Sequence record: NC_061440.1
Length of the DNA: 64,000 nt
Strand: one strand, 5' to 3'
Positions 55 through 9,416 of this stretch are shown here, in pieces (the stretch's first letter is position 1; each line of letters opens with the position of its first letter). The position numbers and the translations under genes are program-made. The notes below the pieces were generated by a model. That model was not told the DNA's origin and searched no databases. It worked only from the letters and a program-made list of their open reading frames with translations.

Positions 55-1680
55 TTAGGCTTCTGGTTCAACGTAGGTGTTGGTACCAGTTACGAATGCG
101 ATTGCAACTTTCTTCGCGGTGGTCAGCTCTACACGCAGGCTGTTCGCGTCGATGAACACAACTTCGTCAGGGATGATCTGGTAGCCAGTATCATCAACAA
201 CGGTGACGGTACCGAACTTGTGGCCAGCGTTGTGGGTGAAGGTGTGTGCAGTAGCTGCAACGTCACCGCTCGCAGTTTTGTCGTACTGATAAACTTTAGC
301 AGCAGAACCGCTAGAGCCAGCAGCGATTGCATCAGTAACGAACTTCTTGCTCACCGCAGAGTTGTCGGTGTAGTCAGCGCTGTCACCAGACAGGGTGATC
401 TGAGTAACTTCACCACCAGCAGCGTCGATGAAACCACCAGCAGTTTTAACAGCAGCAACATCGACAATGATTTTGCTGTTATCAACGTCCTGTTTCAGGC
501 CGGTACCCAGTGCAGCAGCAGCGATCTGGCCGTAGCCAACACCGCCGTCAGCGATTGCGATACCGTCAACAGAGCGAGACAGAGTAGCGCCGTCCAGTTT
601 AACGCGAGTGCTGCCTGCGTTATCTTCCAGACCGCCGTTGGCGTCCAGTTTAGCAGTCACGGCATTGCTGGTGATCTGAATACCAGCGCCGACTTTAACG
701 TTGACAACGTTACCAGCTTTTTCCAGACCGTCACCAGCGTTGAACTCGGAAGCGCCGCCGAATGTAGTCCACTCAGTACCATCGAAACGACGATACTCTT
801 TGATATCTTTAACCCAGGTAACCGCACCACCAGCTTCGCTGTCAGTTGGGTCGAACACGATAACGAACGCAGTGCCGTTATAGCGAACGATCATGTTGTC
901 AGCCAGACCAGTGATAGAACCGAAGTTCGGGTTGATGGTGTCAGCAGACAGGATGATGTACTGCTTACCGTTCTCCAGAACAGGGTCCAGAGTGCCGTCA
1001 GCCTGAATACCGTCAGAGTCTTTCAGCCAGTCGATGCCAGCGATAGCGTTGTCGATATCGATCTTACGAGCAGCGTCGTTCGGGTTAGCAGGAGCGGCCA
1101 GGTTAGCAACGGTATTACCGTTAGCATCCAGGTCGCCAGTCAGTTGGCCGTTAGCCGCATCAACTTTACCCGCCAGCGCAGTTTCGTTCGCGTTAGCTTT
1201 GTTGCTAACAGCAGTGATCTGAGACTGGATGTTAGAGCTTGCGCCAGACAGATAGCCCAGCTCGGCAGCAGTGATGGAGGAGCTTTGCAGTTCAGAGTCG
1301 GCGCCAGCGATAACAACCGCGTTCTCGGTCAGGCCGCTGATTTTGTCTTGCTTGGTAGCAACAACGGTTTCAACGTGTTTCTTAGAAACAGCCGCGTTGT
1401 CAGCAGAAGCAGACTGGTCAGGACCAGACAGTTCGAGGTCAGCAGTCATTGCCACAGAACCGTCAGCCAGGATAGCGCCTTCTACAGAACCACCACCAGT
1501 GCCCAGCTCTTTGATTGCAGTACCGTCGAAGTATTTGTACTTCTTATCGGTGCTGTTGTACCACATGCGGGCTTCTTGTGCCGCGACCAGATCACCAACT
1601 ACAGGGTCGGCTGCAAGAACTTCTGGGCGGAAGTTCTTAATAGAAGCGCCGAGCATTAAATCAAGATTACCAGTACGCAT
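55..1680 (-). CDS. Virion structural / fibre-associated protein (541 aa)
   Basis: AGGAG SD upstream. Gly/Ala/Asp-rich beta-repeats (GAGIQ, GDGLEK). C-terminal HTFTHNAGHK..VTVVDDTG..DANSLRVE module is shared with the 275-aa protein. Confidence 0.75.
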   Translation of the reverse strand: MRTGNLDLMLGASIKNFRPEVLAADPVVGDLVAAQEARMWYNSTDKKYKYFDGTAIKELGTGGGSVEGAILADGSVAMTADLELSGPDQSASADNAAVSKKHVETVVATKQDKISGLTENAVVIAGADSELQSSSITAAELGYLSGASSNIQSQITAVSNKANANETALAGKVDAANGQLTGDLDANGNTVANLAAPANPNDAARKIDIDNAIAGIDWLKDSDGIQADGTLDPVLENGKQYIILSADTINPNFGSITGLADNMIVRYNGTAFVIVFDPTDSEAGGAVTWVKDIKEYRRFDGTEWTTFGGASEFNAGDGLEKAGNVVNVKVGAGIQITSNAVTAKLDANGGLEDNAGSTRVKLDGATLSRSVDGIAIADGGVGYGQIAAAALGTGLKQDVDNSKIIVDVAAVKTAGGFIDAAGGEVTQITLSGDSADYTDNSAVSKKFVTDAIAAGSSGSAAKVYQYDKTASGDVAATAHTFTHNAGHKFGTVTVVDDTGYQIIPDEVVFIDANSLRVELTTAKKVAIAFVTGTNTYVEPEA

Positions 1681-1703: not shown

Positions 1704-2447
1704 TTAGAAGAACTGACTGTCACAACCATCAAGGCTACAGCGTAACGCTTGATATGCAGTGGCACGTTCTTCCGTTAGATTGATATACTTATCGTCAATA
1801 TTGTACTTCACTCTAACAGGCACGTCGTACCCATCGAGCAGGCCGTGTCGCTTATAAGCATTCAGGCGTAGCACAGGTGAACTGACCTTAGCATGTTCCA
1901 TGATGTTCAGGTCAATCTTGTCGGCGTAAATGAATGGACGCTCTCGCTTACACATGATGTAATCAATCTCATGCAAATTAAAGAGTGTGAAATTCATATA
2001 GCCAATAATGAACTCCGCAATCAGCCTGAATGAATCAAACATATCAGGCCTAAATTGTTGTGTGAGAATATGATCAACGTACGGTCTGATCTCGGTACGC
2101 ATCTCATACCAACTCTCACAGAACAATGCAGGGAAGTCTTCAGGGTGATGGGCCATAAGGCCCAACACTTCTTTCTCTGTATCTGCAAAGGAACTTAAAA
2201 TGTCTGAGGCATCGTCAGACGCCTCGACACCACGACCGGTCGAAATAAAACGACGCTCAATGTCTCTCAACCAAGATTCCGAAGCAGATAGGTATTGGAG
2301 CAGTGTTTCTCTCGCGGCAGCCGAGAACTCATGCCTGTCGGAGTCAAGAACCTCACCGAGCATGAAGGCTTTCGCTTTGTAGAAATCAATATAGCGCTCG
2401 GCGGTAAATCGTCGAAACCCTATGTTATTCCTCAAATAGCCCATCAT
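1704..2447 (-). CDS. Hypothetical cytoplasmic, mostly helical protein (247 aa)
   Basis: Long ORF coupled to the upstream gene by an ATGA overlap at 2444-2447. No recognised motif. Confidence 0.75.
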   Translation of the reverse strand: MMGYLRNNIGFRRFTAERYIDFYKAKAFMLGEVLDSDRHEFSAAARETLLQYLSASESWLRDIERRFISTGRGVEASDDASDILSSFADTEKEVLGLMAHHPEDFPALFCESWYEMRTEIRPYVDHILTQQFRPDMFDSFRLIAEFIIGYMNFTLFNLHEIDYIMCKRERPFIYADKIDLNIMEHAKVSSPVLRLNAYKRHGLLDGYDVPVRVKYNIDDKYINLTEERATAYQALRCSLDGCDSQFF

Positions 2448-2959
2448 CGCAATGCCCTCAGATCATTCAACTCCGTGTTGCCTTGAGCGTTTGGAGTTGT
2501 GTAGAGAGAACTGGAGATGCTCTGCAATCTCAGCCCGAGCTTCTCAAGTTCTTGCTGGTTGCCACCTAACTTCTCAAGGACTTCACGCATAAGTTCAACG
2601 GAGCCTTGATGGTCACGGGATTGCTGGGAAATGATTCGTTCGAAGCGCTGCATAGCACGGAGAACAGAGTTCAATCCCTCTTTCATATCCAAATTATCGA
2701 CTGGCGCAGAATCAGAAATTGACTGAATCATTCGCATCATCTGCGCCAAGTCGGCTTGCAATTCATCGCTATCTGTATTGATAGGACGACCTGCTTCTAG
2801 CTCTGCGTTACGCGCTTTCAATTGCTCCAGTTCTTCAAGCTGAGGCAGTAGCTTCAACCAAACGTATGCACCACCTGCGATTAGCAGAACTACAGAGAAG
2901 ACAGTCGCGTAGTTGGACGCAAGCAACTTGTCTAAAATTTCCGCCCACATTATATTCAA
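2444..2959 (-). CDS. Bitopic membrane protein with coiled-coil tail (171 aa), holin-like candidate
   Basis: Single hydrophobic segment YATVFSVVLLIAGGAYVWL followed by heptad-rich LEELEQLKARN...LEKLGLRLQ. Coupled to both neighbours by 4-nt overlaps. Confidence 0.7.
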   Translation of the reverse strand: MNIMWAEILDKLLASNYATVFSVVLLIAGGAYVWLKLLPQLEELEQLKARNAELEAGRPINTDSDELQADLAQMMRMIQSISDSAPVDNLDMKEGLNSVLRAMQRFERIISQQSRDHQGSVELMREVLEKLGGNQQELEKLGLRLQSISSSLYTTPNAQGNTELNDLRALR

Positions 2960-3240
2960 CCCTTACAGGTGTTATCGTTCAGATCAACAATGACCCTCTC
3001 GGCACCTGGTTCGTTTACGTCAGTGGTTTTGTACGTGTGCGCCATCCTAGGCTTGAACTCTAAGCAGCTCTGACCGTAACGTCCATCGACAACACAGATG
3101 GCGGACAGGCAACTCACATCTTCCTTGAGAATTAAATTTTCAGGAGACTGGTTGACACTCCTAACGGCAGTGATTACAAACCCAACCACAGCGATAGCAA
3201 TGACAACCACAATGGCAATCCTAATTCGCTTGGCTTGCAT
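2956..3240 (-). CDS. Small membrane-anchored protein with 4-Cys extracytoplasmic domain (94 aa)
   Basis: KRIR, then IAIVVVIAIAVVGFVITAV (positive-inside N-terminus), then a domain with 4 Cys. GAGG SD upstream. Confidence 0.75.
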   Translation of the reverse strand: MQAKRIRIAIVVVIAIAVVGFVITAVRSVNQSPENLILKEDVSCLSAICVVDGRYGQSCLEFKPRMAHTYKTTDVNEPGAERVIVDLNDNTCKG

Positions 3241-3275
3241 TTTTGGTTCTACCTCACAGTCCTTTTATCTGACTG

Positions 3276-3283
3276 AAATTAGC
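3276..3283 (-). promoter_or_regulatory. GCTAATTT motif (candidate late promoter)
   Basis: Intergenic, 36 nt upstream of the 3240 start. Same octamer recurs upstream of several other genes. Confidence 0.55.
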
Positions 3284-3305
3284 GAACCACACGCCCTGCG
3301 AGGAT

Positions 3306-4334
3306 TTATTCCTCCAATACGCCACTAATCTCCGCAAACATATTTTTGTACACTAAACTCCCACCAAGTTTGTCCAATCTGTCCACCAGCACATATAGCT
3401 TCGGTGTCGTGCGCATGTTAGCCCACGTCTTCTCGTTCGGGTCGAGTCCGCCTACAGTAGGCACAATCACCAGACTGAGGTTTTTATTGGCTCGAACGAA
3501 ACCGATATCCAGATGCGTCCTGTTTATAGTCCTGATAAGCCTATTGATTGCGTCCAAACCAACAGGCTTGTTGAATTCCGTATCATTGACAGTGTTGACC
3601 AAACTAATGAGAATTCCTTTGTCTTTCGTGTCGATATCAAACAGGTCTGCTTTCAGATCTGCCACAGTCGATGCCGAGAAGTATGACACGTCGTGGTTAA
3701 GATCTTTCAGGCAGGAACCTAAGGCACGCGCCGATTCGATGTGAGCCACGTTGTCATCCCGAAGAATATACACAGGCGCATCTGGCTGGTGGGTGCGTTT
3801 CGATATCAAATCAATAAGCTCGCAAGAGGGTCGACCAACAGTAGCCAGCCCCTTGTTAGCAATATAGAATTTGTCACGATACACGTCATATATGTTAGGA
3901 GGCATATACTTCATGTAGTCATCGTCCAGACTAAGAATCATTCGGGGCTTAGTTAATTGAACGACCAACTGCATACTACGGAGCGAAGCCTTGTACTCTG
4001 TATCGGAAAGCACACGGCTAATCGGCAGATACTGCACAACCACAAAGCGTTCGTCGATTGAGTCAACGACAGACCGTATGAGTGTGCTGCCTAATGTAGG
4101 TCCAGCAGAGAACTGGGTAACGATCATCAAACTGCCTGCGACCAAGCTACGTGTCTTAGCTACCGTCTGACCGCTACCCAGCTCGACTACGGAGGACTCC
4201 CACGTTAAGGCTGGATCGTCTCGTCCGCTATCGGCATGTACATAAGCTGCGCTACACCAGAGACAGGCTCCAAGAATGTAAGCAGCAATACGTTGTCCGG
4301 ATCGGCCTCTGCTGGATTGACCGTTTCGGGCCAT
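3306..4334 (-). CDS. Secreted periplasmic-binding-protein-like (ABC_sub_bind / sensor-kinase input-type) domain protein (342 aa)
   Basis: AGGAG SD upstream of ATG 4334. Arg-rich n-region, h-region IAAYILGACLWCSAA and YVHA|D cleavage site. LMIVTQFS...VVVQYLPISR...KPRMILSLDDDYMKY resembles the VLILHSY...EYLD.KR...KPDLII..DD.A pattern of PBP-type input domains of histidine kinases and diguanylate cyclases. Confidence 0.6.
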   Translation of the reverse strand: MARNGQSSRGRSGQRIAAYILGACLWCSAAYVHADSGRDDPALTWESSVVELGSGQTVAKTRSLVAGSLMIVTQFSAGPTLGSTLIRSVVDSIDERFVVVQYLPISRVLSDTEYKASLRSMQLVVQLTKPRMILSLDDDYMKYMPPNIYDVYRDKFYIANKGLATVGRPSCELIDLISKRTHQPDAPVYILRDDNVAHIESARALGSCLKDLNHDVSYFSASTVADLKADLFDIDTKDKGILISLVNTVNDTEFNKPVGLDAINRLIRTINRTHLDIGFVRANKNLSLVIVPTVGGLDPNEKTWANMRTTPKLYVLVDRLDKLGGSLVYKNMFAEISGVLEE

Positions 4335-5032
4335 AGCACTTCTCCTCTCTCGTCAGTGACGTAAGGAATGCCGGCGCCTTTACCCAATCCGTGTCGTAAA
4401 GCCCAAACAGTGTCGGCATTCTCCTGCACGAACACTAACCCTTTGACTTGCACATCGGACGTTGCATTCTCCAGTACCTCAACACGCTTCTCAAGAAGCT
4501 CGGCATCGGATTGCAGCACACGAATAGCAGACAGGTTAGAGTTAACGCGCTGGTTCATGTTGTTGAACATGGTGAAGAACGAGTTGTTCATCGCCGTGCG
4601 AACGCCGTCCGTATAGGACTTTGGAATTAGTTCATCGTTGTCAAACGTTGTTACGCCTGTACGCGCGAGAACTTTACCGGTAAGACGTCCACCACTTGCG
4701 CTGATAATCTGAGGAGCAGGCAAATCAGCCTCATCCCAGATTTGAACAGTGGTCATCACCGTATTGTAGTCGGTCTCTTCCTGCCACGTATTCTTATACG
4801 GTGCAGTAGCCGTTTTGGACTTACGACGCATGACTTTCTTATAGCCAGCGTTCGATCCATCGGCGATGATCCAGAGACCGTTCAGTGGAAATACGTGAGT
4901 AATAGGTTCGGCGAACGAAAGAATAATCGTAACGTCGGCGCCTACCTTGTACGCAATATCGTTCGACGCAGAAAGCCCTTGCTGTTGAGCAAGAGCAATC
5001 AGCGTGTCCACGTAGTTAGTCAACTGGCTCAT
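4205..5032 (-). CDS. Virion structural protein (275 aa)
   Basis: SD upstream. Coiled coil followed by a C-terminal W.LRHGLG...VTDERG...LLLTFLEPVSG.A module paralogous to the C-terminus of the 541-aa protein. Confidence 0.75.
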   Translation of the reverse strand: MSQLTNYVDTLIALAQQQGLSASNDIAYKVGADVTIILSFAEPITHVFPLNGLWIIADGSNAGYKKVMRRKSKTATAPYKNTWQEETDYNTVMTTVQIWDEADLPAPQIISASGGRLTGKVLARTGVTTFDNDELIPKSYTDGVRTAMNNSFFTMFNNMNQRVNSNLSAIRVLQSDAELLEKRVEVLENATSDVQVKGLVFVQENADTVWALRHGLGKGAGIPYVTDERGEVLWPETVNPAEADPDNVLLLTFLEPVSGVAQLMYMPIADETIQP

Positions 5033-5494: not shown

Positions 5495-6316
5495 TTAATC
5501 TCCCTTAGCCTCGAACCAGAAGTCCCAGCCTACAGTATTGGTGCCGCTGGACTTAATGGTAAAGCCACCTAACAAGGCGTTCTCGTTCACTGCACTAGTA
5601 CCATCAAGGTTGTAGAGCGTAAACGTCTTAGCCTGGTTCGTTGCCGCATTCAAGAACGTAATCTGAATGCTTAGGCAGCGGTTGATGAATGGGCTGTTGA
5701 AGATAACGTGAATGGTGTCAGTAGTTGATTTGTTCACGATGCGACCCATGTTCTGGGTAAAGCCCGTGTTCATATCGCGGTTGCTACCAATCCATGCGTT
5801 TGGAATCACAGCACCTGTTACAGGGTCAAGTGCTTGCGCTGTTCGATACTCGTCGATAGCAGCATCACGCCCCGGGTTACCAGTAGGACCCGTCGCACCA
5901 GTAGGGCCGACTGCGCCCGTGTTACCAGTAGCGCCGACAGGGCCCGTGTTACCAGTAGGACCGTTACGGCCTCTTGGGCCACGAGGGCCAGGACAACCGT
6001 CTTCACCATCACGTCCGTCACGACCATCAGCACCAGGAAGACCGCGTAAGCCGTCTTTACCCTGCTTGCCTTCACGTCCTGACTTGAGCTGGTCGGCAGT
6101 AGGCAAACCAATAACGTTCGTCTGACTGCCGTCCGGCCAAATGAGTGTTAACGTACCTGTTGTCGTATCGAACTGAGCACCCTGAGCACCTGGAATCTTC
6201 GCAGCTTCTTGCGGACTGATAAACGCGACCGCAGTAGAAGTCTTCTTACCTAGCACTTTACCGACGGGGTCGGTGCCACCGTCGATGAGTGAAGGATTAA
6301 TGCGTGTTAAAGACAT
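5495..6316 (-). CDS. Collagen-like fibre protein with C-terminal gp53-like/lectin-like domain (273 aa)
   Basis: Continuous Gly-X-Y triplets (GREGKQG...GPTGNPG). C-terminal F.SPF...C....GGFTI...WFEAKG tail-fibre end module. Confidence 0.85.
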   Translation of the reverse strand: MSLTRINPSLIDGGTDPVGKVLGKKTSTAVAFISPQEAAKIPGAQGAQFDTTTGTLTLIWPDGSQTNVIGLPTADQLKSGREGKQGKDGLRGLPGADGRDGRDGEDGCPGPRGPRGRNGPTGNTGPVGATGNTGAVGPTGATGPTGNPGRDAAIDEYRTAQALDPVTGAVIPNAWIGSNRDMNTGFTQNMGRIVNKSTTDTIHVIFNSPFINRCLSIQITFLNAATNQAKTFTLYNLDGTSAVNENALLGGFTIKSSGTNTVGWDFWFEAKGD

Positions 6317-6539: not shown

Positions 6540-9416
6540 TTACTCGATCTCACTCGGTTCCCAGCACAGAATTGGGCGGCGCCATACTTGGAACACACCG
6601 ATAGGCGAAGCACGGCCAGAATCAATGAAGCAGTCCATAGTTGTACCACCAGAGTTACCGCTCTGCATAAGAGTTTGCAGGTTAGCAATCCAAGAAGCAC
6701 GTCCACCAGAGTCTGCCTCAAACAGTCCTTCCCACACCATATCAAAAGCACCGTTCCATGCGTTGAAGTGGTGAGAAGAATACGCACCATCACCGACTGA
6801 ACAAAGAACCATGTACTGGTAATCTTTGACGCAAGGAATAGCGTAGTTATTGCCGCGCGGAACTGCTGTACCGTTGTTATTAAAGATACACTCCCAGCCA
6901 GTACGATCAGCAGCACCAGTAGTTAAGAACAGAGGACGACGAATGATCATCATAATCCCGTTCTCACCGCCATTGTTGCTGGACTTCTCGCAGTACGCAT
7001 TACAACGTAAGGAACGGTCCACAGTGAATGTGGTTGAGTTTGAGAAGTCACGGCAGTAGTAGTTCGATCCCCACTTAGGCAGATATTCTGCTGGTGGTAC
7101 AAAGAAGTGACGCTCCGCAAGTTCGATCTCACCGTAACGGTCGTAAGCAAATACAATGTACTCGTAGCCCGCCTCAATCTGAATGTTGTGGCCTTGACTG
7201 CCGATACCATTCCACTTCCATACAACCTGCCAATCGTTCGTATCACGTTCAGGCATTTCGGTAATCAACTGATAAGGACGCTCATATACGTGCCACACCT
7301 TCCCTTCTTCTGTCGTGTTGATATACAACGAAGAAGGGTCATTGATGTTGCCGTTAGACGTACCACAATAAACTTTATGCGATGCACCAGCAGAGTTGTA
7401 GATAGTGCCTGAGCTTACAGACTGGAACATGTCCCAGTTCATCATCAGGTGCGAGGTACACATTTCATTCTGGCCACTACCATCAGAGGTTGTGAGCAGG
7501 TACTCGTTGAGGTCTTTGAACGCATAGCGCACATAGTTAGAGCCAGCACGGTTAACGCGGTGTACCCAGTCATGCGATTGAACTTTCGGCACAGGGAAGC
7601 AAGGGTTAGTGACAGACACGACGAAGTTTTTAGTTTCGTACATCGGCAGTTTCTTGAAGCGGTTATCACGAATCGTTACCGTGTGCTTCATGCCATATGT
7701 CTGCGCACCATCCATACCGCCCAGCACTTTGTAGTACGACTCATGCGCACTCTTGGTGTTTTCGTACAGACTAGTGATGCCAAGCCCAACGTTGCCGTCA
7801 CGGTCAGTGCCGCAGCAGAAGGGCACGTTACCTGAATCAAAGTCAAAGCCAACAGAGTAATAGCTGTCAGGTGAACTTGATTTAGGGCCCCAGTAGAGTT
7901 CGGTGTAAGCAGAACCTTCACCGATACCCGGCTCACCGAACACGCAGTATGCAGCACGATACACGTACTGACTGCCCTGGAACACACGGCGCGATGCACC
8001 AATGCGATACATAGCAGCAGGAAGGCCACCCTGAACACGGTTAACGTCAGCCGTATCATACGACACAACGAAGACATAACAGTCGGTGCCGATTGAGTTG
8101 AGGAACGCAGCACAGGCAGCAGCGTTAGTTGTACCTGGAGCTGTACCTTCGGCCGATGCGTGAATGTCAAACGAGCGGCGCTCAAGCAACGCAAGGTCAG
8201 ACTTACGAATCTTATAGACGTTCAGGCCACGCGTATCTCGGTACGTCACACCATTATAGACAGTGTAGCCATAGTCACCAGTGTCTAGGTAACGCTGATA
8301 ACCAACTACGTGCGAGAACAGTTTACTACGTGCTTGCAGCGACTGACCATTCTGATTCGACCAACTGACCGACACATCACCAGCAGCCATACGTGCTGCC
8401 CAGTCATCAGGCTTGTATGGGTATGTGGTAACATCGAAGTTCACACCGTACGCGGAGCCTGGCTCTACGCAGCATGGATTGCGATAGATGATTGGTGGAT
8501 CAATCACTATGTCATCAGGAATATCGACTTGACCGCAGTACAGTTGCTTCCACGTACCAGGCTGACCTCCGAGCGAACTAGGTCCCGCAGCAGGTGTTGT
8601 GTTGAACTGATAGATAGCAGACGTGCGATAGTTAATCTGATTGTGAAGCTGAGGAACGTTCGTCCACGCAATGTGATTACCGAACGAGTTAATGCTTTTG
8701 TCGTGTGCTGCAGGAGTCGAGACAACATAAGCCTGACCGTTACTGCGAATGCCGAGTGGGTTGAAGATAGCGTTGAAGTTAACGTTACCCTCGTAGGCAT
8801 TCTTCTGCAATACAATCAGGTGGACTCCGTTGCGGTGAGCTTCACGTAAAGCAGTGAGCATCGCTGTAGGCATACTCTGGTTAGTCGCAGACAACAGCAG
8901 CATGACACAACTGAACTGTTTGAAGTAACGGTAGTCGCCGTTGTACCCGTAAGCGCCTGCGTTAATCTCCTGCCAGCTATGCGCTAACATATCGAGAGGC
9001 ATACGCTGCATGTAACCAACGAGCTGGCCCCATGATTCCATTGCTGTGTCGTCGTTGACAGGAGCAAGGTCGGAGATGACCAACATCGTACTGCCGTTTG
9101 TAATGTTTGCGTTGAAGCCACGCTGGGTCAGCAAATGGCGGAACACACCCATGTTGTTGATAGACTTGTTACGGTAGTTGCCCATCCAGCCGTAGTTTGA
9201 ATCCACAAGAGGGCTACCGTCTCGAACAAATCGACCATTCATATAAACAGAGGCAAAGCCGCAGACGTATGCTTGCGCGTGTCCGTCCACTACGAACGAA
9301 GTAAAGCGGGAAGCATCTACCGCCATCGCATTAACAGCAGCCTCAGAGCCATTGCCGGGACTACCACTAAACACAGGAGTGATGCCTCGTGCGTACAGGC
9401 AACTTTGTTGCAGCAT
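6540..9416 (-). CDS. Fibre / receptor-binding protein with ILEI (PANDER-like) domain (958 aa)
   Basis: AAGGA SD. RGLNVYKIRK...RSFDIH...AAFLNSIG...VFVVSYD...YRAAYCVFG matches the ILEI carbohydrate-binding-like domain. Three aromatic-rich repeats near the C-terminus. Confidence 0.7.
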   Translation of the reverse strand: MLQQSCLYARGITPVFSGSPGNGSEAAVNAMAVDASRFTSFVVDGHAQAYVCGFASVYMNGRFVRDGSPLVDSNYGWMGNYRNKSINNMGVFRHLLTQRGFNANITNGSTMLVISDLAPVNDDTAMESWGQLVGYMQRMPLDMLAHSWQEINAGAYGYNGDYRYFKQFSCVMLLLSATNQSMPTAMLTALREAHRNGVHLIVLQKNAYEGNVNFNAIFNPLGIRSNGQAYVVSTPAAHDKSINSFGNHIAWTNVPQLHNQINYRTSAIYQFNTTPAAGPSSLGGQPGTWKQLYCGQVDIPDDIVIDPPIIYRNPCCVEPGSAYGVNFDVTTYPYKPDDWAARMAAGDVSVSWSNQNGQSLQARSKLFSHVVGYQRYLDTGDYGYTVYNGVTYRDTRGLNVYKIRKSDLALLERRSFDIHASAEGTAPGTTNAAACAAFLNSIGTDCYVFVVSYDTADVNRVQGGLPAAMYRIGASRRVFQGSQYVYRAAYCVFGEPGIGEGSAYTELYWGPKSSSPDSYYSVGFDFDSGNVPFCCGTDRDGNVGLGITSLYENTKSAHESYYKVLGGMDGAQTYGMKHTVTIRDNRFKKLPMYETKNFVVSVTNPCFPVPKVQSHDWVHRVNRAGSNYVRYAFKDLNEYLLTTSDGSGQNEMCTSHLMMNWDMFQSVSSGTIYNSAGASHKVYCGTSNGNINDPSSLYINTTEEGKVWHVYERPYQLITEMPERDTNDWQVVWKWNGIGSQGHNIQIEAGYEYIVFAYDRYGEIELAERHFFVPPAEYLPKWGSNYYCRDFSNSTTFTVDRSLRCNAYCEKSSNNGGENGIMMIIRRPLFLTTGAADRTGWECIFNNNGTAVPRGNNYAIPCVKDYQYMVLCSVGDGAYSSHHFNAWNGAFDMVWEGLFEADSGGRASWIANLQTLMQSGNSGGTTMDCFIDSGRASPIGVFQVWRRPILCWEPSEIE

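What the first reader, a model, noticed from the sequence alone, without database searches (positions are those of the whole stretch)
3306..4334. Phage-encoded stand-alone periplasmic sensor-type domain
Seen: cleavable signal peptide, and a mature region whose pattern matches, by eye, the two-lobed PBP-type (ABC_sub_bind-like) input domain normally fused to histidine kinases and diguanylate cyclases. It has no transmembrane or output domain. Inference: a secreted ligand-binding protein that either senses a periplasmic cue for the phage or acts as a decoy/competitor for a host sensor kinase. I know of no characterised phage example.
Basis: partly seen in the sequence, partly recalled or inferred. 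Interest (0 to 1): 0.72.

Follow-up and report, generated by a model that had tools for sequence, protein, structure and literature searches.

The report
Exported binding-protein-fold protein of jumbo phages
A giant Erwinia phage, and all its relatives, encode a protein with an export signal and the two-lobed fold of bacterial periplasmic binding proteins. It always sits next to two small phage membrane proteins inside the tail-fibre gene block, which suggests an undescribed phage device working in the host cell envelope.

Summary
The window is Erwinia phage pEa_SNUABM_22, a 265-kb Alexandravirus. ORF 3306-4334 (-) is real in its full 342-aa form, although GenBank annotates only residues 70-342.

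The 5' extension encodes a Sec-type signal peptide and overlaps the upstream fibre-like gene by 130 nt. It is open, starts at the same codon and keeps a -3/-1 cleavage motif in all 20 related loci. In three lineages the annotated internal Met is not a start codon. Distant homologues carry ordinary MKK-type signal peptides.

A high-confidence AlphaFold model of residues 66-342 (pLDDT 90, pTM 0.85) matches only type-I periplasmic-binding-protein / Venus-flytrap structures in the PDB. The best TM-score is 0.53, to 3lft. No Pfam, NCBIfam or PDB sequence match exists, so this is a phage-only family of that fold, not a member of ABC_sub_bind.

New here: the gene is a core, syntenic part of a four-gene cassette conserved from Erwinia phages to Pseudomonas phage PaBG and metagenomic phages. 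The cassette is this protein, a ~90-aa bitopic four-Cys protein, a ~170-aa TM plus coiled-coil protein, and a ~250-aa soluble protein.

I infer a periplasmic binding module that works with the phage's own membrane partners. The ligand and the output are unknown. The host-kinase decoy idea has no support.

The parts
3306..4334 (-). Full-length gene, 342 aa plus stop. This is the long form of pEa_SNUABM_22 gp103 (MPK63_gp103).
   Evidence: ORF list. The start codon is conserved in 20/20 related loci. tblastn covers residues 1-342.
4342..4346 (-). Shine-Dalgarno core AGGAG, 7 nt before the ATG at 4334. It lies inside the coding sequence of the upstream gene.
   Evidence: Sequence. AGGAG is kept in Alexandravirus, Snuvirus and Sasquatchvirus, with weaker AGG/GGAG variants in distant lineages.
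4233..4334 (-). Predicted Sec signal peptide, residues 1-34: basic n-region, 17-residue hydrophobic core, V-H-A then D35.
   Evidence: Sequence. The -3/-1 pattern [VLA]-x-[AS] is kept in every lineage. Classical signal peptides occur in distant homologues. Cleavage was not tested.
4205..4334 (-). 130-nt out-of-frame overlap with the 3' end of the upstream fibre-like gene gp104. The signal peptide is encoded here.
   Evidence: The frame is kept open against expectation (P 0.004-0.039 per lineage). Synonymous variation of gp104 is reduced here.
4128..4232 (-). Variable acidic Ser/Thr/Gly-rich linker, residues 35-69. It is poorly conserved and varies in length, but is always in frame.
   Evidence: Alignment A1. 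pLDDT below 50. Absent in JA11, PaBG and other distant homologues.
3309..4127 (-). Two-lobed type-I PBP / Venus-flytrap-like domain, residues 70-342. Corresponds to the GenBank CDS (3306-4127 with its stop codon) and to PHROG 31505.
   Evidence: AF2 model pLDDT 89.9. Foldseek PDB top 50 are all PBP1/VFT. Family-wide conserved Y189, D193, D251, E253, N271, H274, R319.
2956..3240 (-). gp102, 94 aa. Basic N-terminus, one TM segment, then a ~65-aa C-terminal domain with four conserved Cys. Always the next gene downstream.
   Evidence: The same protein was found as an uncalled ORF in Y3 and in metagenomic locus L032. The Cys pattern is conserved from Erwinia phages to PaBG and NCTB.
2444..2950 (-). 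gp101, 168 aa from the RefSeq ATG. Short N-terminal tail, one TM segment, then a long helical coiled-coil region ending in a conserved DLR-x-L motif.
   Evidence: (PHROG 31730 'membrane protein'). Only coiled-coil-type matches in the PDB.
1704..2447 (-). gp100, 247 aa, no TM segment. Its start overlaps the gp101 stop by 4 nt. RefSeq names it 'ABC transporter', without support.
   Evidence: No Pfam, NCBIfam or PDB-sequence match. Conserved in every lineage.
4205..5032 (-). gp104, 275 aa, a fibre-like protein upstream. Its conserved C-terminus is overprinted by the signal peptide. RefSeq names it 'HNH endonuclease', without support.
   Evidence: tail-protein PHROGs at the N-terminus; no HNH domain.

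Best explanation
gp103 is made as a 342-residue precursor and exported through the Sec pathway. It is probably cut after Ala34, leaving a ~34-kDa periplasmic protein: a short flexible acidic linker followed by a divergent type-I periplasmic-binding-protein (Venus-flytrap) domain.

It is the founding example of a family found here only in phage or phage-like contigs, with no sequence-detectable cellular relatives. It is the first gene of a four-gene cassette that is a core, syntenic part of the tail-fibre region in the PaBG / NCTB / JA11 / Y3 / Alexandra group of jumbo myoviruses.

Shown:
- the gene and its true start;
- conservation of the export signal;
- the predicted fold;
- the synteny.

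Inferred:
- The cleft, lined by the family-wide conserved Tyr, Asp, Asp, Glu, Asn, His and Arg, binds a small periplasmic ligand or a partner domain. This residue set resembles the sugar-binding sets of PBP1 proteins.
- The protein acts through the phage's own neighbours: the disulfide-type periplasmic domain of the 94-aa bitopic protein, the TM plus coiled-coil 168-aa protein, and the soluble 247-aa protein.
- This would work the way free PBPs dock onto membrane sensors such as XylFII-LytS, LuxP-LuxQ, TorT-TorS, or MBP/GGBP on chemoreceptors.
- Because the cassette sits among late structural genes, the most likely output is control of a late envelope event: lysis timing, lysis inhibition or superinfection status. 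The output is the weakest step.
For: True start and export signal:
- Conserved first start codon and open frame in all relatives.
- M70 is not a start in three lineages.
- Ribosome-binding site upstream of the long start.
- Frame openness is improbable by chance, and synonymous variation is reduced in the overlap.
- Conserved -3/-1 motif. Classical Sec signals in NCTB, PaBG and most of the 62 distant homologues.

Fold:
- pLDDT 89.9, pTM 0.85.
- All top 50 PDB Foldseek hits are PBP1/VFT, with TM up to 0.53.
- Family models in BFVD agree, TM 0.67-0.80.

Conserved polar residues lie in loops at strand ends of lobe 2.

Cassette:
- Identical gene order in Erwinia, Dickeya, Yersinia and Pseudomonas phages, NCTB, and metagenomic contigs at 15-25% identity.
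- The small protein has four conserved Cys, consistent with an oxidising compartment, and is present even where it was not annotated.
- No terminator or promoter signal above chance between the genes.

Phage-only distribution: 62 clusters among 1.84 billion representatives, with phage-like context in the three that were looked up. The scan of 185,579 species genomes gave one hit, a 7-kb contig binned into a MAG.
Against: - No experiment shows export, cleavage, ligand binding or any contact with the neighbours.
- No signal-peptide predictor could be run.
- Fold similarity is remote: about 10% identity, TM 0.42-0.53, E about 1e-4. No sequence profile links the family to any PBP family.
- The topology of the 168-aa protein is uncertain.
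- A position inside a structural gene block would more usually suggest a morphogenetic role.
- The gene's invariance across the group could equally mean an assembly or lysis function with no sensing involved.
Confidence: 0.5

Rival explanations
1. Host-directed binding protein. The exported protein docks onto a host component (ABC importer, chemoreceptor or sensor kinase), either as a decoy or competitor or as an added substrate-binding protein in the manner of cyanophage PstS.
For: PBP1 fold and export signal. Free PBPs commonly work by docking onto membrane partners (general knowledge). A phage PstS that integrates into the host transporter has been studied (bioRxiv 10.1101/2021.07.20.453049, seen).
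Against: - There is no sequence similarity to any cellular SBP family, so it is not a recently captured host gene.
- The family is conserved across phages of Erwinia, Dickeya, Yersinia and Pseudomonas and of unknown hosts, which argues against one specific host partner.
- It is always linked to phage membrane proteins.
- It is a core gene in a structural block rather than a variable accessory gene.
Confidence: 0.13
2. Receptor masking or superinfection exclusion. A periplasmic or envelope protein encoded beside the receptor-binding genes blocks the receptor or the entry route of later phages and protects progeny from debris, like T5 Llp or Cor.
For: Location next to fibre genes. Export signal. 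In the enterobacterial clade the sequence L-G-A-C resembles a lipobox.
Against: - The lipobox-like motif is absent from NCTB, PaBG and most distant homologues. Where present it can be explained by constraint from the overlapping gene.
- Exclusion proteins are usually small, variable and host-specific. This protein is a conserved core protein with a conserved polar site.
- The fibre proteins vary between these phages, whereas this gene's family-wide polar site stays conserved.
Confidence: 0.12
3. Enzyme with a PBP-like scaffold. The conserved Asp/Asp/Glu/Asn/His/Arg cluster would be catalytic, acting on an envelope polymer (peptidoglycan, periplasmic glucan or capsule precursor) late in infection.
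For: The strongly conserved polar residues include a near-invariant Asn-x-x-His. The protein is periplasmic. Halo-forming and depolymerase activities are reported for the relative PaBG (PMC7412058).
Against: All 50 best structural matches are binding proteins or receptors, not hydrolases. There is no match to any enzyme family. The same residue types are typical of sugar-binding PBPs (general knowledge).
Confidence: 0.1
4. The database annotation is right. Translation starts at M70, the upstream open frame is a by-product of the conserved upstream gene, and the 273-aa product is a cytoplasmic tail-fibre assembly factor or a minor virion protein.
For: The RefSeq/GenBank CDS and PHROG 31505 begin at M70. 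The gene lies between fibre-like and virion-protein genes. The PaBG neighbour gp257 is in the virion (PMC7412058 Table 1).
Against: - M70 is Leu or Val in three lineages. The deposited starts there cut into conserved residues.
- The variable linker stays in frame despite indels.
- The open frame is improbable by chance.
- Non-overlapping classical signal peptides occur in NCTB, PaBG and the metagenomic homologues.
- The PaBG homologue gp253 is not among the 14 identified virion bands. This is weak evidence, since only abundant proteins were seen.
Confidence: 0.05

Closest known systems
Type-I periplasmic binding proteins / Venus-flytrap domains (LIVBP, GGBP, RBP, ABP, UrtA, AmiC, LacI cores, iGluR/mGluR amino-terminal domains)
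   Same: N-terminal export signal. Two alpha/beta lobes in the predicted model. Every one of the 50 best PDB matches belongs to this group. The conserved polar residues sit at strand ends, where these proteins bind ligand.
   Different: About 10% identity and no profile-level sequence match. At 277 residues the domain is at the small end of the range. No ABC permease or ATPase gene lies nearby. Found here only in phage or phage-like contigs.
ABC_sub_bind-type proteins (Pfam PF04392; solved examples 3lft, 3lkv and CD0873/6hnj, whose family assignment is from my memory)
   Same: Best TM-scores of the whole search (0.53/0.51 for 3lft, 0.48-0.49 for 3lkv and 6hnj) and similar size of about 290 aa.
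   Different: The Pfam model does not match the window protein at E<=1 or any of 53 family members at E<=0.01. The profile-to-3lft sequence match has E 1.1. There is no transporter context.
XylFII of the XylFII-LytS xylose sensor (PDB 5xss), and other PBP-plus-membrane-sensor pairs (LuxP-LuxQ, TorT-TorS, ChvE-VirA, MBP-Tar); their mechanisms are from general knowledge
   Same: Best Foldseek E-value, 7.5e-5. A stand-alone PBP-fold protein with no transporter, encoded beside membrane proteins it could dock onto.
   Different: The phage neighbours have no kinase, HAMP or MCP signalling domain detectable by Pfam or NCBIfam. The only hint is a coiled-coil-type match of the 168-aa protein to MCP cytoplasmic domains (E 5e-5), which may be compositional.
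Cyanophage PstS (phage-encoded phosphate-binding protein)
   Same: A phage-encoded, exported, stand-alone periplasmic binding protein (bioRxiv 10.1101/2021.07.20.453049).
   Different: PstS is a host-derived auxiliary metabolic gene of the type-II PBP class that feeds the host PstCAB (general knowledge). The present protein has no cellular sequence relatives, is a core gene, and is linked to phage membrane proteins.
T4 lysis-inhibition proteins (holin T, periplasmic antiholin RI) and the placement of gene t after the tail-fibre genes (general knowledge)
   Same: Small bitopic and periplasmic phage proteins encoded at the end of a tail-fibre operon. They show how a periplasmic signal could control lysis timing.
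   Different: No sequence similarity to T, RI or any holin or spanin family. T4 has no PBP-fold component. In the relative PaBG the annotated muramidase lies elsewhere in the genome (PaBG_00044).

Membership tests
Type-I periplasmic-binding-protein / Venus-flytrap fold (structural superfamily) | Two Rossmann-like alpha/beta lobes with alternating strand-helix order | tested here: met
   AF2 model of residues 66-342 (pLDDT 89.9, pTM 0.85) shows regular beta-alpha alternation in two blocks, residues 69-158 and 188-278. This is a prediction, not an experimental structure.
Type-I periplasmic-binding-protein / Venus-flytrap fold (structural superfamily) | Closest solved structures are members of the superfamily | tested here: met
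   Foldseek against the PDB: all top 50 hits are PBP1/VFT, probability 0.96-1.00, E 7.5e-5 to 2.6e-3, TM 0.28-0.53. An independent lower-quality model gave the same result.
Type-I periplasmic-binding-protein / Venus-flytrap fold (structural superfamily) | Three hinge cross-overs between lobes (type I) rather than two (type II) | not testable with these tools
   Model coordinates cannot be inspected here. Only the hit list, which is all type-I proteins, speaks to it.
Type-I periplasmic-binding-protein / Venus-flytrap fold (structural superfamily) | Export to the periplasm (N-terminal signal peptide or lipoprotein signal) | tested here: met
   A conserved n-h-c signal with a -3/-1 motif in all lineages, and classical signals in distant homologues. 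This rests on sequence analysis only. No predictor or experiment was available.
Type-I periplasmic-binding-protein / Venus-flytrap fold (structural superfamily) | Binds a ligand in the inter-lobe cleft | not testable with these tools
   Only indirect evidence: family-wide conserved Y189, D193, D251, E253, N271, H274 and R319 in loops at strand ends.
Pfam PF04392 ABC_sub_bind | Significant match to the family HMM | tested here: not met
   The model does not match the window protein at E<=1 or any of 53 family members at E<=0.01. NCBIfam also gives nothing.
Pfam PF04392 ABC_sub_bind | Encoded with ABC permease and ATPase genes | tested here: not met
   The neighbours are fibre-like proteins, two bitopic membrane proteins and a 247-aa protein with no ABC or Walker-type domain. 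The RefSeq name 'ABC transporter' for gp100 comes from a PHROG label only.
Sensor input domain fused to a histidine kinase or diguanylate cyclase | TM segment(s) and a cytoplasmic output domain in the same polypeptide | tested here: not met
The ORF ends at residue 342 with no second hydrophobic segment or output domain.
Outer-membrane lipoprotein (o-spanin, Llp/Cor-type exclusion protein) | Conserved lipobox with an invariant Cys at +1 | tested here: not met
   L-G-A-C is present in the Erwinia, Dickeya and Yersinia clade. There is no lipobox in NCTB, PaBG or most distant homologues. The motif lies in the region constrained by the overlapping gene.
Virion structural protein | Detected in purified particles | tested here: inconclusive
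   The PaBG homologue (PaBG_00253) is absent from the 14 identified bands, while neighbour gp257 is present (PMC7412058 Table 1). Only abundant proteins were identified. The Y3 proteomics paper is not held.

The most novel reading that the evidence does not exclude
The four-gene cassette is a phage-built trans-envelope sensing device. A periplasmic Venus-flytrap protein reads a small-molecule or envelope cue, for example a sugar or a cell-wall fragment, and passes it through two bitopic membrane proteins to a cytoplasmic protein. This would let a whole lineage of jumbo phages tune a late decision (lysis timing, lysis inhibition or assembly) to the state of the host envelope. It would be a phage counterpart of PBP-dependent bacterial signalling, built from parts with no cellular sequence relatives.
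Probability: 0.2. Interest if true: 0.8.

Novelty: new variant of a known kind. Interest (0 to 1): 0.6.

Why it matters
- Phage proteins that work in the periplasm are few, and most are lysis or exclusion factors. A conserved, core, exported Venus-flytrap protein tied to phage membrane proteins would add a new class of phage envelope function, and possibly a route by which lytic jumbo phages sense their host's surroundings.
- The work corrects the start codon of this gene in most deposited genomes of the group. It also documents a conserved 130-nt dual-coding overlap in which a signal peptide is overprinted on the C-terminus of a fibre-like protein.
- The family is small and has a high-confidence model with a defined conserved site, so ligand screening and genetics are directly feasible.
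- These phages are candidates for fire-blight biocontrol, so knowing what controls their late envelope events has practical interest.

Tried and rejected
- Pfam, NCBIfam and PADLOC scans of the protein and its four neighbours gave nothing significant.
- A Pfam scan of 53 family members gave nothing relevant.
- Profile searches against PDB sequences gave no significant match for the PBP-like family or for gp100. For gp101 they gave only coiled-coil-type matches.
- Word-indexed homologue search found only close relatives, all named hypothetical.
- The search for related loci with the deep alignment A4 failed because no stretch was conserved enough. The genome-contig scan with A1 found one 7-kb MAG contig only.
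- Tat signal considered and rejected. Twin arginines are not consistently placed next to the hydrophobic core, and distant homologues have plain Lys-rich Sec signals.
- Lipoprotein considered and rejected as a family feature (see membership test).
- Lysis-cassette membership considered. There is no match to holin, antiholin, spanin or endolysin families. In PaBG the muramidase is elsewhere.
- gp104/gp99 shared C-terminal domain. Both weakly hit PHROG 21918, but pairwise BLASTP shows nothing.
- Promoter and terminator scan: counts equal those of shuffled sequence.
- Literature: no proteomic or functional data for this gene. The Y3 paper is not held.
- I began listing the whole genome annotation to locate the lysis genes and stopped, because nearly everything is 'hypothetical protein'.
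Full report
**Source and gene model**

The window is 100% identical to Erwinia phage pEa_SNUABM_22 (NC_061440.1). This is a 265-kb Alexandravirus, one of the 'hairy' jumbo myoviruses of Erwinia amylovora. Window coordinate equals record coordinate minus 62,000.

The finding's ORF, 3306..4334 on the minus strand, is present and encodes 342 aa. The deposited record annotates only its last 273 codons, as gp103 'hypothetical protein' starting at window 4127. PHROG 31505 (unknown function) likewise covers only residues 70-342. That extension overlaps the 3' end of the upstream gene gp104 (4205..5032) by 130 nt in another frame. Whether the extension is translated was therefore the first thing to settle.

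**Is the long form real? Yes.**

I compared GenBank relatives from six named genera (Alexandravirus, Sasquatchvirus, Snuvirus, Yoloswagvirus, Rivsvirus, Salmondvirus), plus Yersinia phage fHe-Yen9-02 and phage NCTB, and 20 IMG/VR loci.

- The frame upstream of M70 is open in every one. A start codon sits at the same aligned position and is the first possible start in the open frame. It is ATG everywhere except JA11/JA29, where it is GTG; a metagenomic JA11-like phage has ATG there.
- tblastn with the 342-aa form aligns residues 1-342 down to 40-44% identity.
- In the Yoloswag, SNUABM_5 and JA11 lineages the codon equivalent to M70 is Leu or Val. The starts chosen by annotators there (residue +20 or +28) cut into the most conserved N-terminal strand of the domain.
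- The segment between the end of the overlap and M70 is poorly conserved and varies in length from 0 to about 35 codons. It never loses frame.
- An AGGAG lies 7 nt before the long start (window 4346-4342). Nothing comparable precedes M70.
- I resampled synonymous codons of the upstream protein's last ~40 residues. The overlapping frame then stays free of stops in only 0.4-3.9% of trials, depending on lineage. It is open in all lineages, including ones whose synonymous sites have diverged substantially.
- Identical-codon frequency at conserved residues of gp104 is higher inside the overlap than outside it (0.60 against 0.46 in the diverse set). This is the direction expected for dual coding.
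- Where there is no overlap (NCTB, PaBG, metagenomic L032/L034/L036), the homologue simply begins with a textbook Sec signal of the MKK-hydrophobic-A-x-A kind.

**The signal**

Residues 1-34 have a basic n-region, a 17-residue hydrophobic core and V-H-A before D35. The -3/-1 pattern ([V/L/A]-x-[A/S]) is kept in every lineage.

I considered a Tat signal and rejected it, because the arginines are not consistently placed. I also considered a lipoprotein signal. L-G-A-C is conserved in the enterobacterial clade, but it is absent from NCTB, PaBG and most distant members. It also lies where the overlapping gene's conserved E-P-V-S-G constrains two of every three bases.

No signal-peptide predictor was available, so cleavage is inferred rather than shown.

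**Fold**

- A first AlphaFold2 run on the full protein with 24 sequences was mediocre (pLDDT 66). It still gave only type-I PBP / Venus-flytrap hits.
- An exhaustive profile search of 1.84 billion representative proteins found 62 relatives. With 76 sequences, the model of residues 66-342 reached pLDDT 89.9 and pTM 0.85, with all five models between 88.8 and 89.9.
- Foldseek against the PDB returned 50 out of 50 type-I PBP/VFT proteins. They include XylFII (best E, 7.5e-5), arabinose-, glucose/galactose- and ribose-binding proteins, UrtA, LIVBP-like proteins, AmiC, LacI cores, the LpoA C-domain, and glutamate-receptor amino-terminal domains.
- The best TM-scores were to 3lft (0.53/0.51), 3lkv and CD0873. 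To my recollection these three are ABC_sub_bind-type proteins. TM-scores are modest because two-lobed proteins differ in hinge angle. Identity is about 10%.
- In the viral structure library the best hits are the family's own members (TM 0.67-0.80), followed by giant-virus PBPs.
- At the sequence level nothing links the family to any PBP family. Pfam gives no hit for the protein or for 53 family members. NCBIfam gives none. PDB profile searches are insignificant, with 3lft at E 1.1.

Membership of ABC_sub_bind is not.

**A conserved site**

Among 54 family members sharing less than 60% identity, the most conserved polar positions are Y189, D193, D251, E253, N271, H274 and R319. N271, H274 and R319 are conserved in at least 91% of members. 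They lie in loops at the ends of strands of the second lobe, which is where PBP1 proteins bind ligand. The residue mix resembles that of sugar-binding PBPs (general knowledge). I treat this as a lead only.

The mature protein has two Cys, C171 and C208. Both are invariant down to 27% identity. I could not measure their distance in the model.

**Context, the main new point**

The gene is not an isolated accessory gene. The gene order is the same in all Erwinia, Dickeya and Yersinia relatives, with counterparts in NCTB:

1. a large fibre or ILEI-domain protein;
2. a ~60-aa protein;
3. a collagen-repeat fibre;
4. a ~150-aa protein;
5. a ~270-aa fibre-like protein;
6. this gene;
7. a ~90-aa protein;
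8. a ~170-aa protein;
9. a ~250-aa protein;
10. a large virion protein.

It is also the order in Pseudomonas phage PaBG, where the gene is RefSeq gp233 and PaBG_00253 in the authors' re-annotation. The same holds for metagenomic contigs whose homologues share only 15-25% identity.

The neighbours have these features:

- The ~90-aa neighbour has a basic N-terminus, one TM segment, and a ~65-aa domain with four Cys in a conserved C-x4-C...C...C pattern. That pattern fits disulfides in the periplasm. I found it as an uncalled ORF in Y3 and in L032, so its co-occurrence is complete in the lineages examined.
- The ~170-aa neighbour has a short N-tail, one TM segment and a long coiled coil ending in D-L-R-x-L. 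Its only PDB similarities are coiled coils, led by MCP cytoplasmic domains at E 5e-5, which may be compositional.
- The ~250-aa protein overlaps the previous stop by 4 nt and matches nothing.
- The RefSeq names 'ABC transporter' (gp100) and 'HNH endonuclease' (gp104) come from PHROG labels and have no domain support.

Promoter-like and terminator-like sites in the region are no more frequent than in shuffled sequence. This is consistent with one long late transcript.

The family appears confined to phages. The three distant contexts I looked up are phage-like. The scan of 185,579 species genomes gave a single hit, on a 7-kb contig binned into a Raoultibacter MAG. That scan only reaches fairly close relatives.

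**What it probably does**

Shown: an exported, PBP-fold, stand-alone protein that is core to a phage lineage and fixed beside two phage membrane proteins.

Inferred: it binds something in the periplasm and acts through those neighbours, by analogy with free PBPs that dock onto membrane sensors (XylFII-LytS, LuxP-LuxQ, TorT-TorS, MBP/GGBP with chemoreceptors; general knowledge). The placement among late structural genes recalls T4, where the holin gene follows the fibre genes and a small periplasmic antiholin sets lysis timing. There is, however, no sequence similarity to any lysis protein, and in PaBG the annotated muramidase is elsewhere. I therefore regard 'periplasmic binding module of a phage envelope cassette' as the best account (0.5) and control of a late envelope event as its most likely, but weakly supported, output.

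Rivals:

- A host-directed decoy or extra SBP (0.13). There is no cellular relative, the hosts are diverse, and the partners are phage-encoded.
- Receptor masking or exclusion (0.12). There is no family-wide lipobox, and the protein is too conserved.
- A PBP-scaffold enzyme (0.10). All structural neighbours are binders.
- The database model of a cytoplasmic 273-aa protein (0.05). It is contradicted by the start-site evidence.

Virion proteomics of PaBG identified 14 abundant proteins, including the neighbouring large protein but not this one (PMC7412058). That is weak evidence against a structural role.

**Novelty**

I found no paper describing the family. A 2026 preprint on envelope-associated proteins of huge phages mentions SBPs only as parts of complete ABC systems near PspA. 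Phage-encoded binding proteins are not unprecedented: cyanophage PstS has been studied (bioRxiv 10.1101/2021.07.20.453049). But that is a host-derived metabolic gene of the other PBP class. I class the present finding as a new variant of a known kind. The fold is familiar; the family is new and phage-only, and its genomic role is unfamiliar.

**Limits**

- No experimental data exist.
- The fold rests on a prediction.
- Structural similarity is remote.
- Model coordinates could not be inspected.
- No multimer prediction was possible.
- The Y3 proteomics paper is not held.

Noticed in passing
window 4205-4334 (minus strand): A 130-nt out-of-frame overlap is conserved across at least six genera. 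The signal peptide of gp103 is overprinted on the conserved C-terminal motif of the fibre-like gp104. More distant relatives (NCTB, PaBG, L032, L034) have no such overlap and carry an ordinary signal peptide, so the overlap looks derived in the enterobacterial clade.
   Followed up: yes
window 4205-5032 and 1704-2447 (minus strand): The RefSeq product names 'HNH endonuclease' (gp104) and 'ABC transporter' (gp100) have no Pfam or NCBIfam domain support. They appear to be propagated PHROG labels. The gp104 N-terminus hits tail-protein PHROGs instead.
   Followed up: partly
L005 (Erwinia phage Y3) about 3385-3669; L032 about 8905-9186: The small four-Cys bitopic protein (homologue of window 2956-3240) is present but not annotated in the Y3 RefSeq record or in a metagenomic contig.
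   Followed up: yes
L007 (Yoloswag) 2312-3322; L008 (SNUABM_5) 2333-3322; L010 (JA11) 2390-3253: The deposited CDS starts for the homologues differ from record to record (245, 253, 248, 273, 278, 287, 294 and 322 aa). Most are truncated relative to the conserved start. Only fHe-Yen9-02 and NCTB are annotated at it.
   Followed up: yes
window 2444-2959 (minus strand): The longest ORF for gp101 begins at a TTG (2959), three codons before the ATG used by RefSeq (2950). Relatives start at the Met-Trp position, so the ATG is the more likely start.
   Followed up: partly
window 5495-6316 and 6540-9416 (minus strand): A collagen-triple-helix repeat fibre protein (Pfam Collagen, E 1.4e-14) lies upstream. 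So does a 958-aa protein that is annotated in AD1, Y3 and JA11 as ILEI-domain-containing and in SNUABM_5 as T4 gp35-like.
   Followed up: no
L039 (JAVWLC010000123.1, 7,021 bp): A contig binned into a Raoultibacter sp. MAG carries a 61%-identical full-length homologue of this Erwinia-phage gene. It is most likely a phage contig that was mis-binned.
   Followed up: no
window 55-1680 and 4205-5032 (minus strand): The C-termini of the 541-aa virion protein and of gp104 both weakly match PHROG 21918 (E 5e-4 and 2e-5), which hints at a shared terminal domain. Pairwise BLASTP shows no significant similarity.
   Followed up: partly
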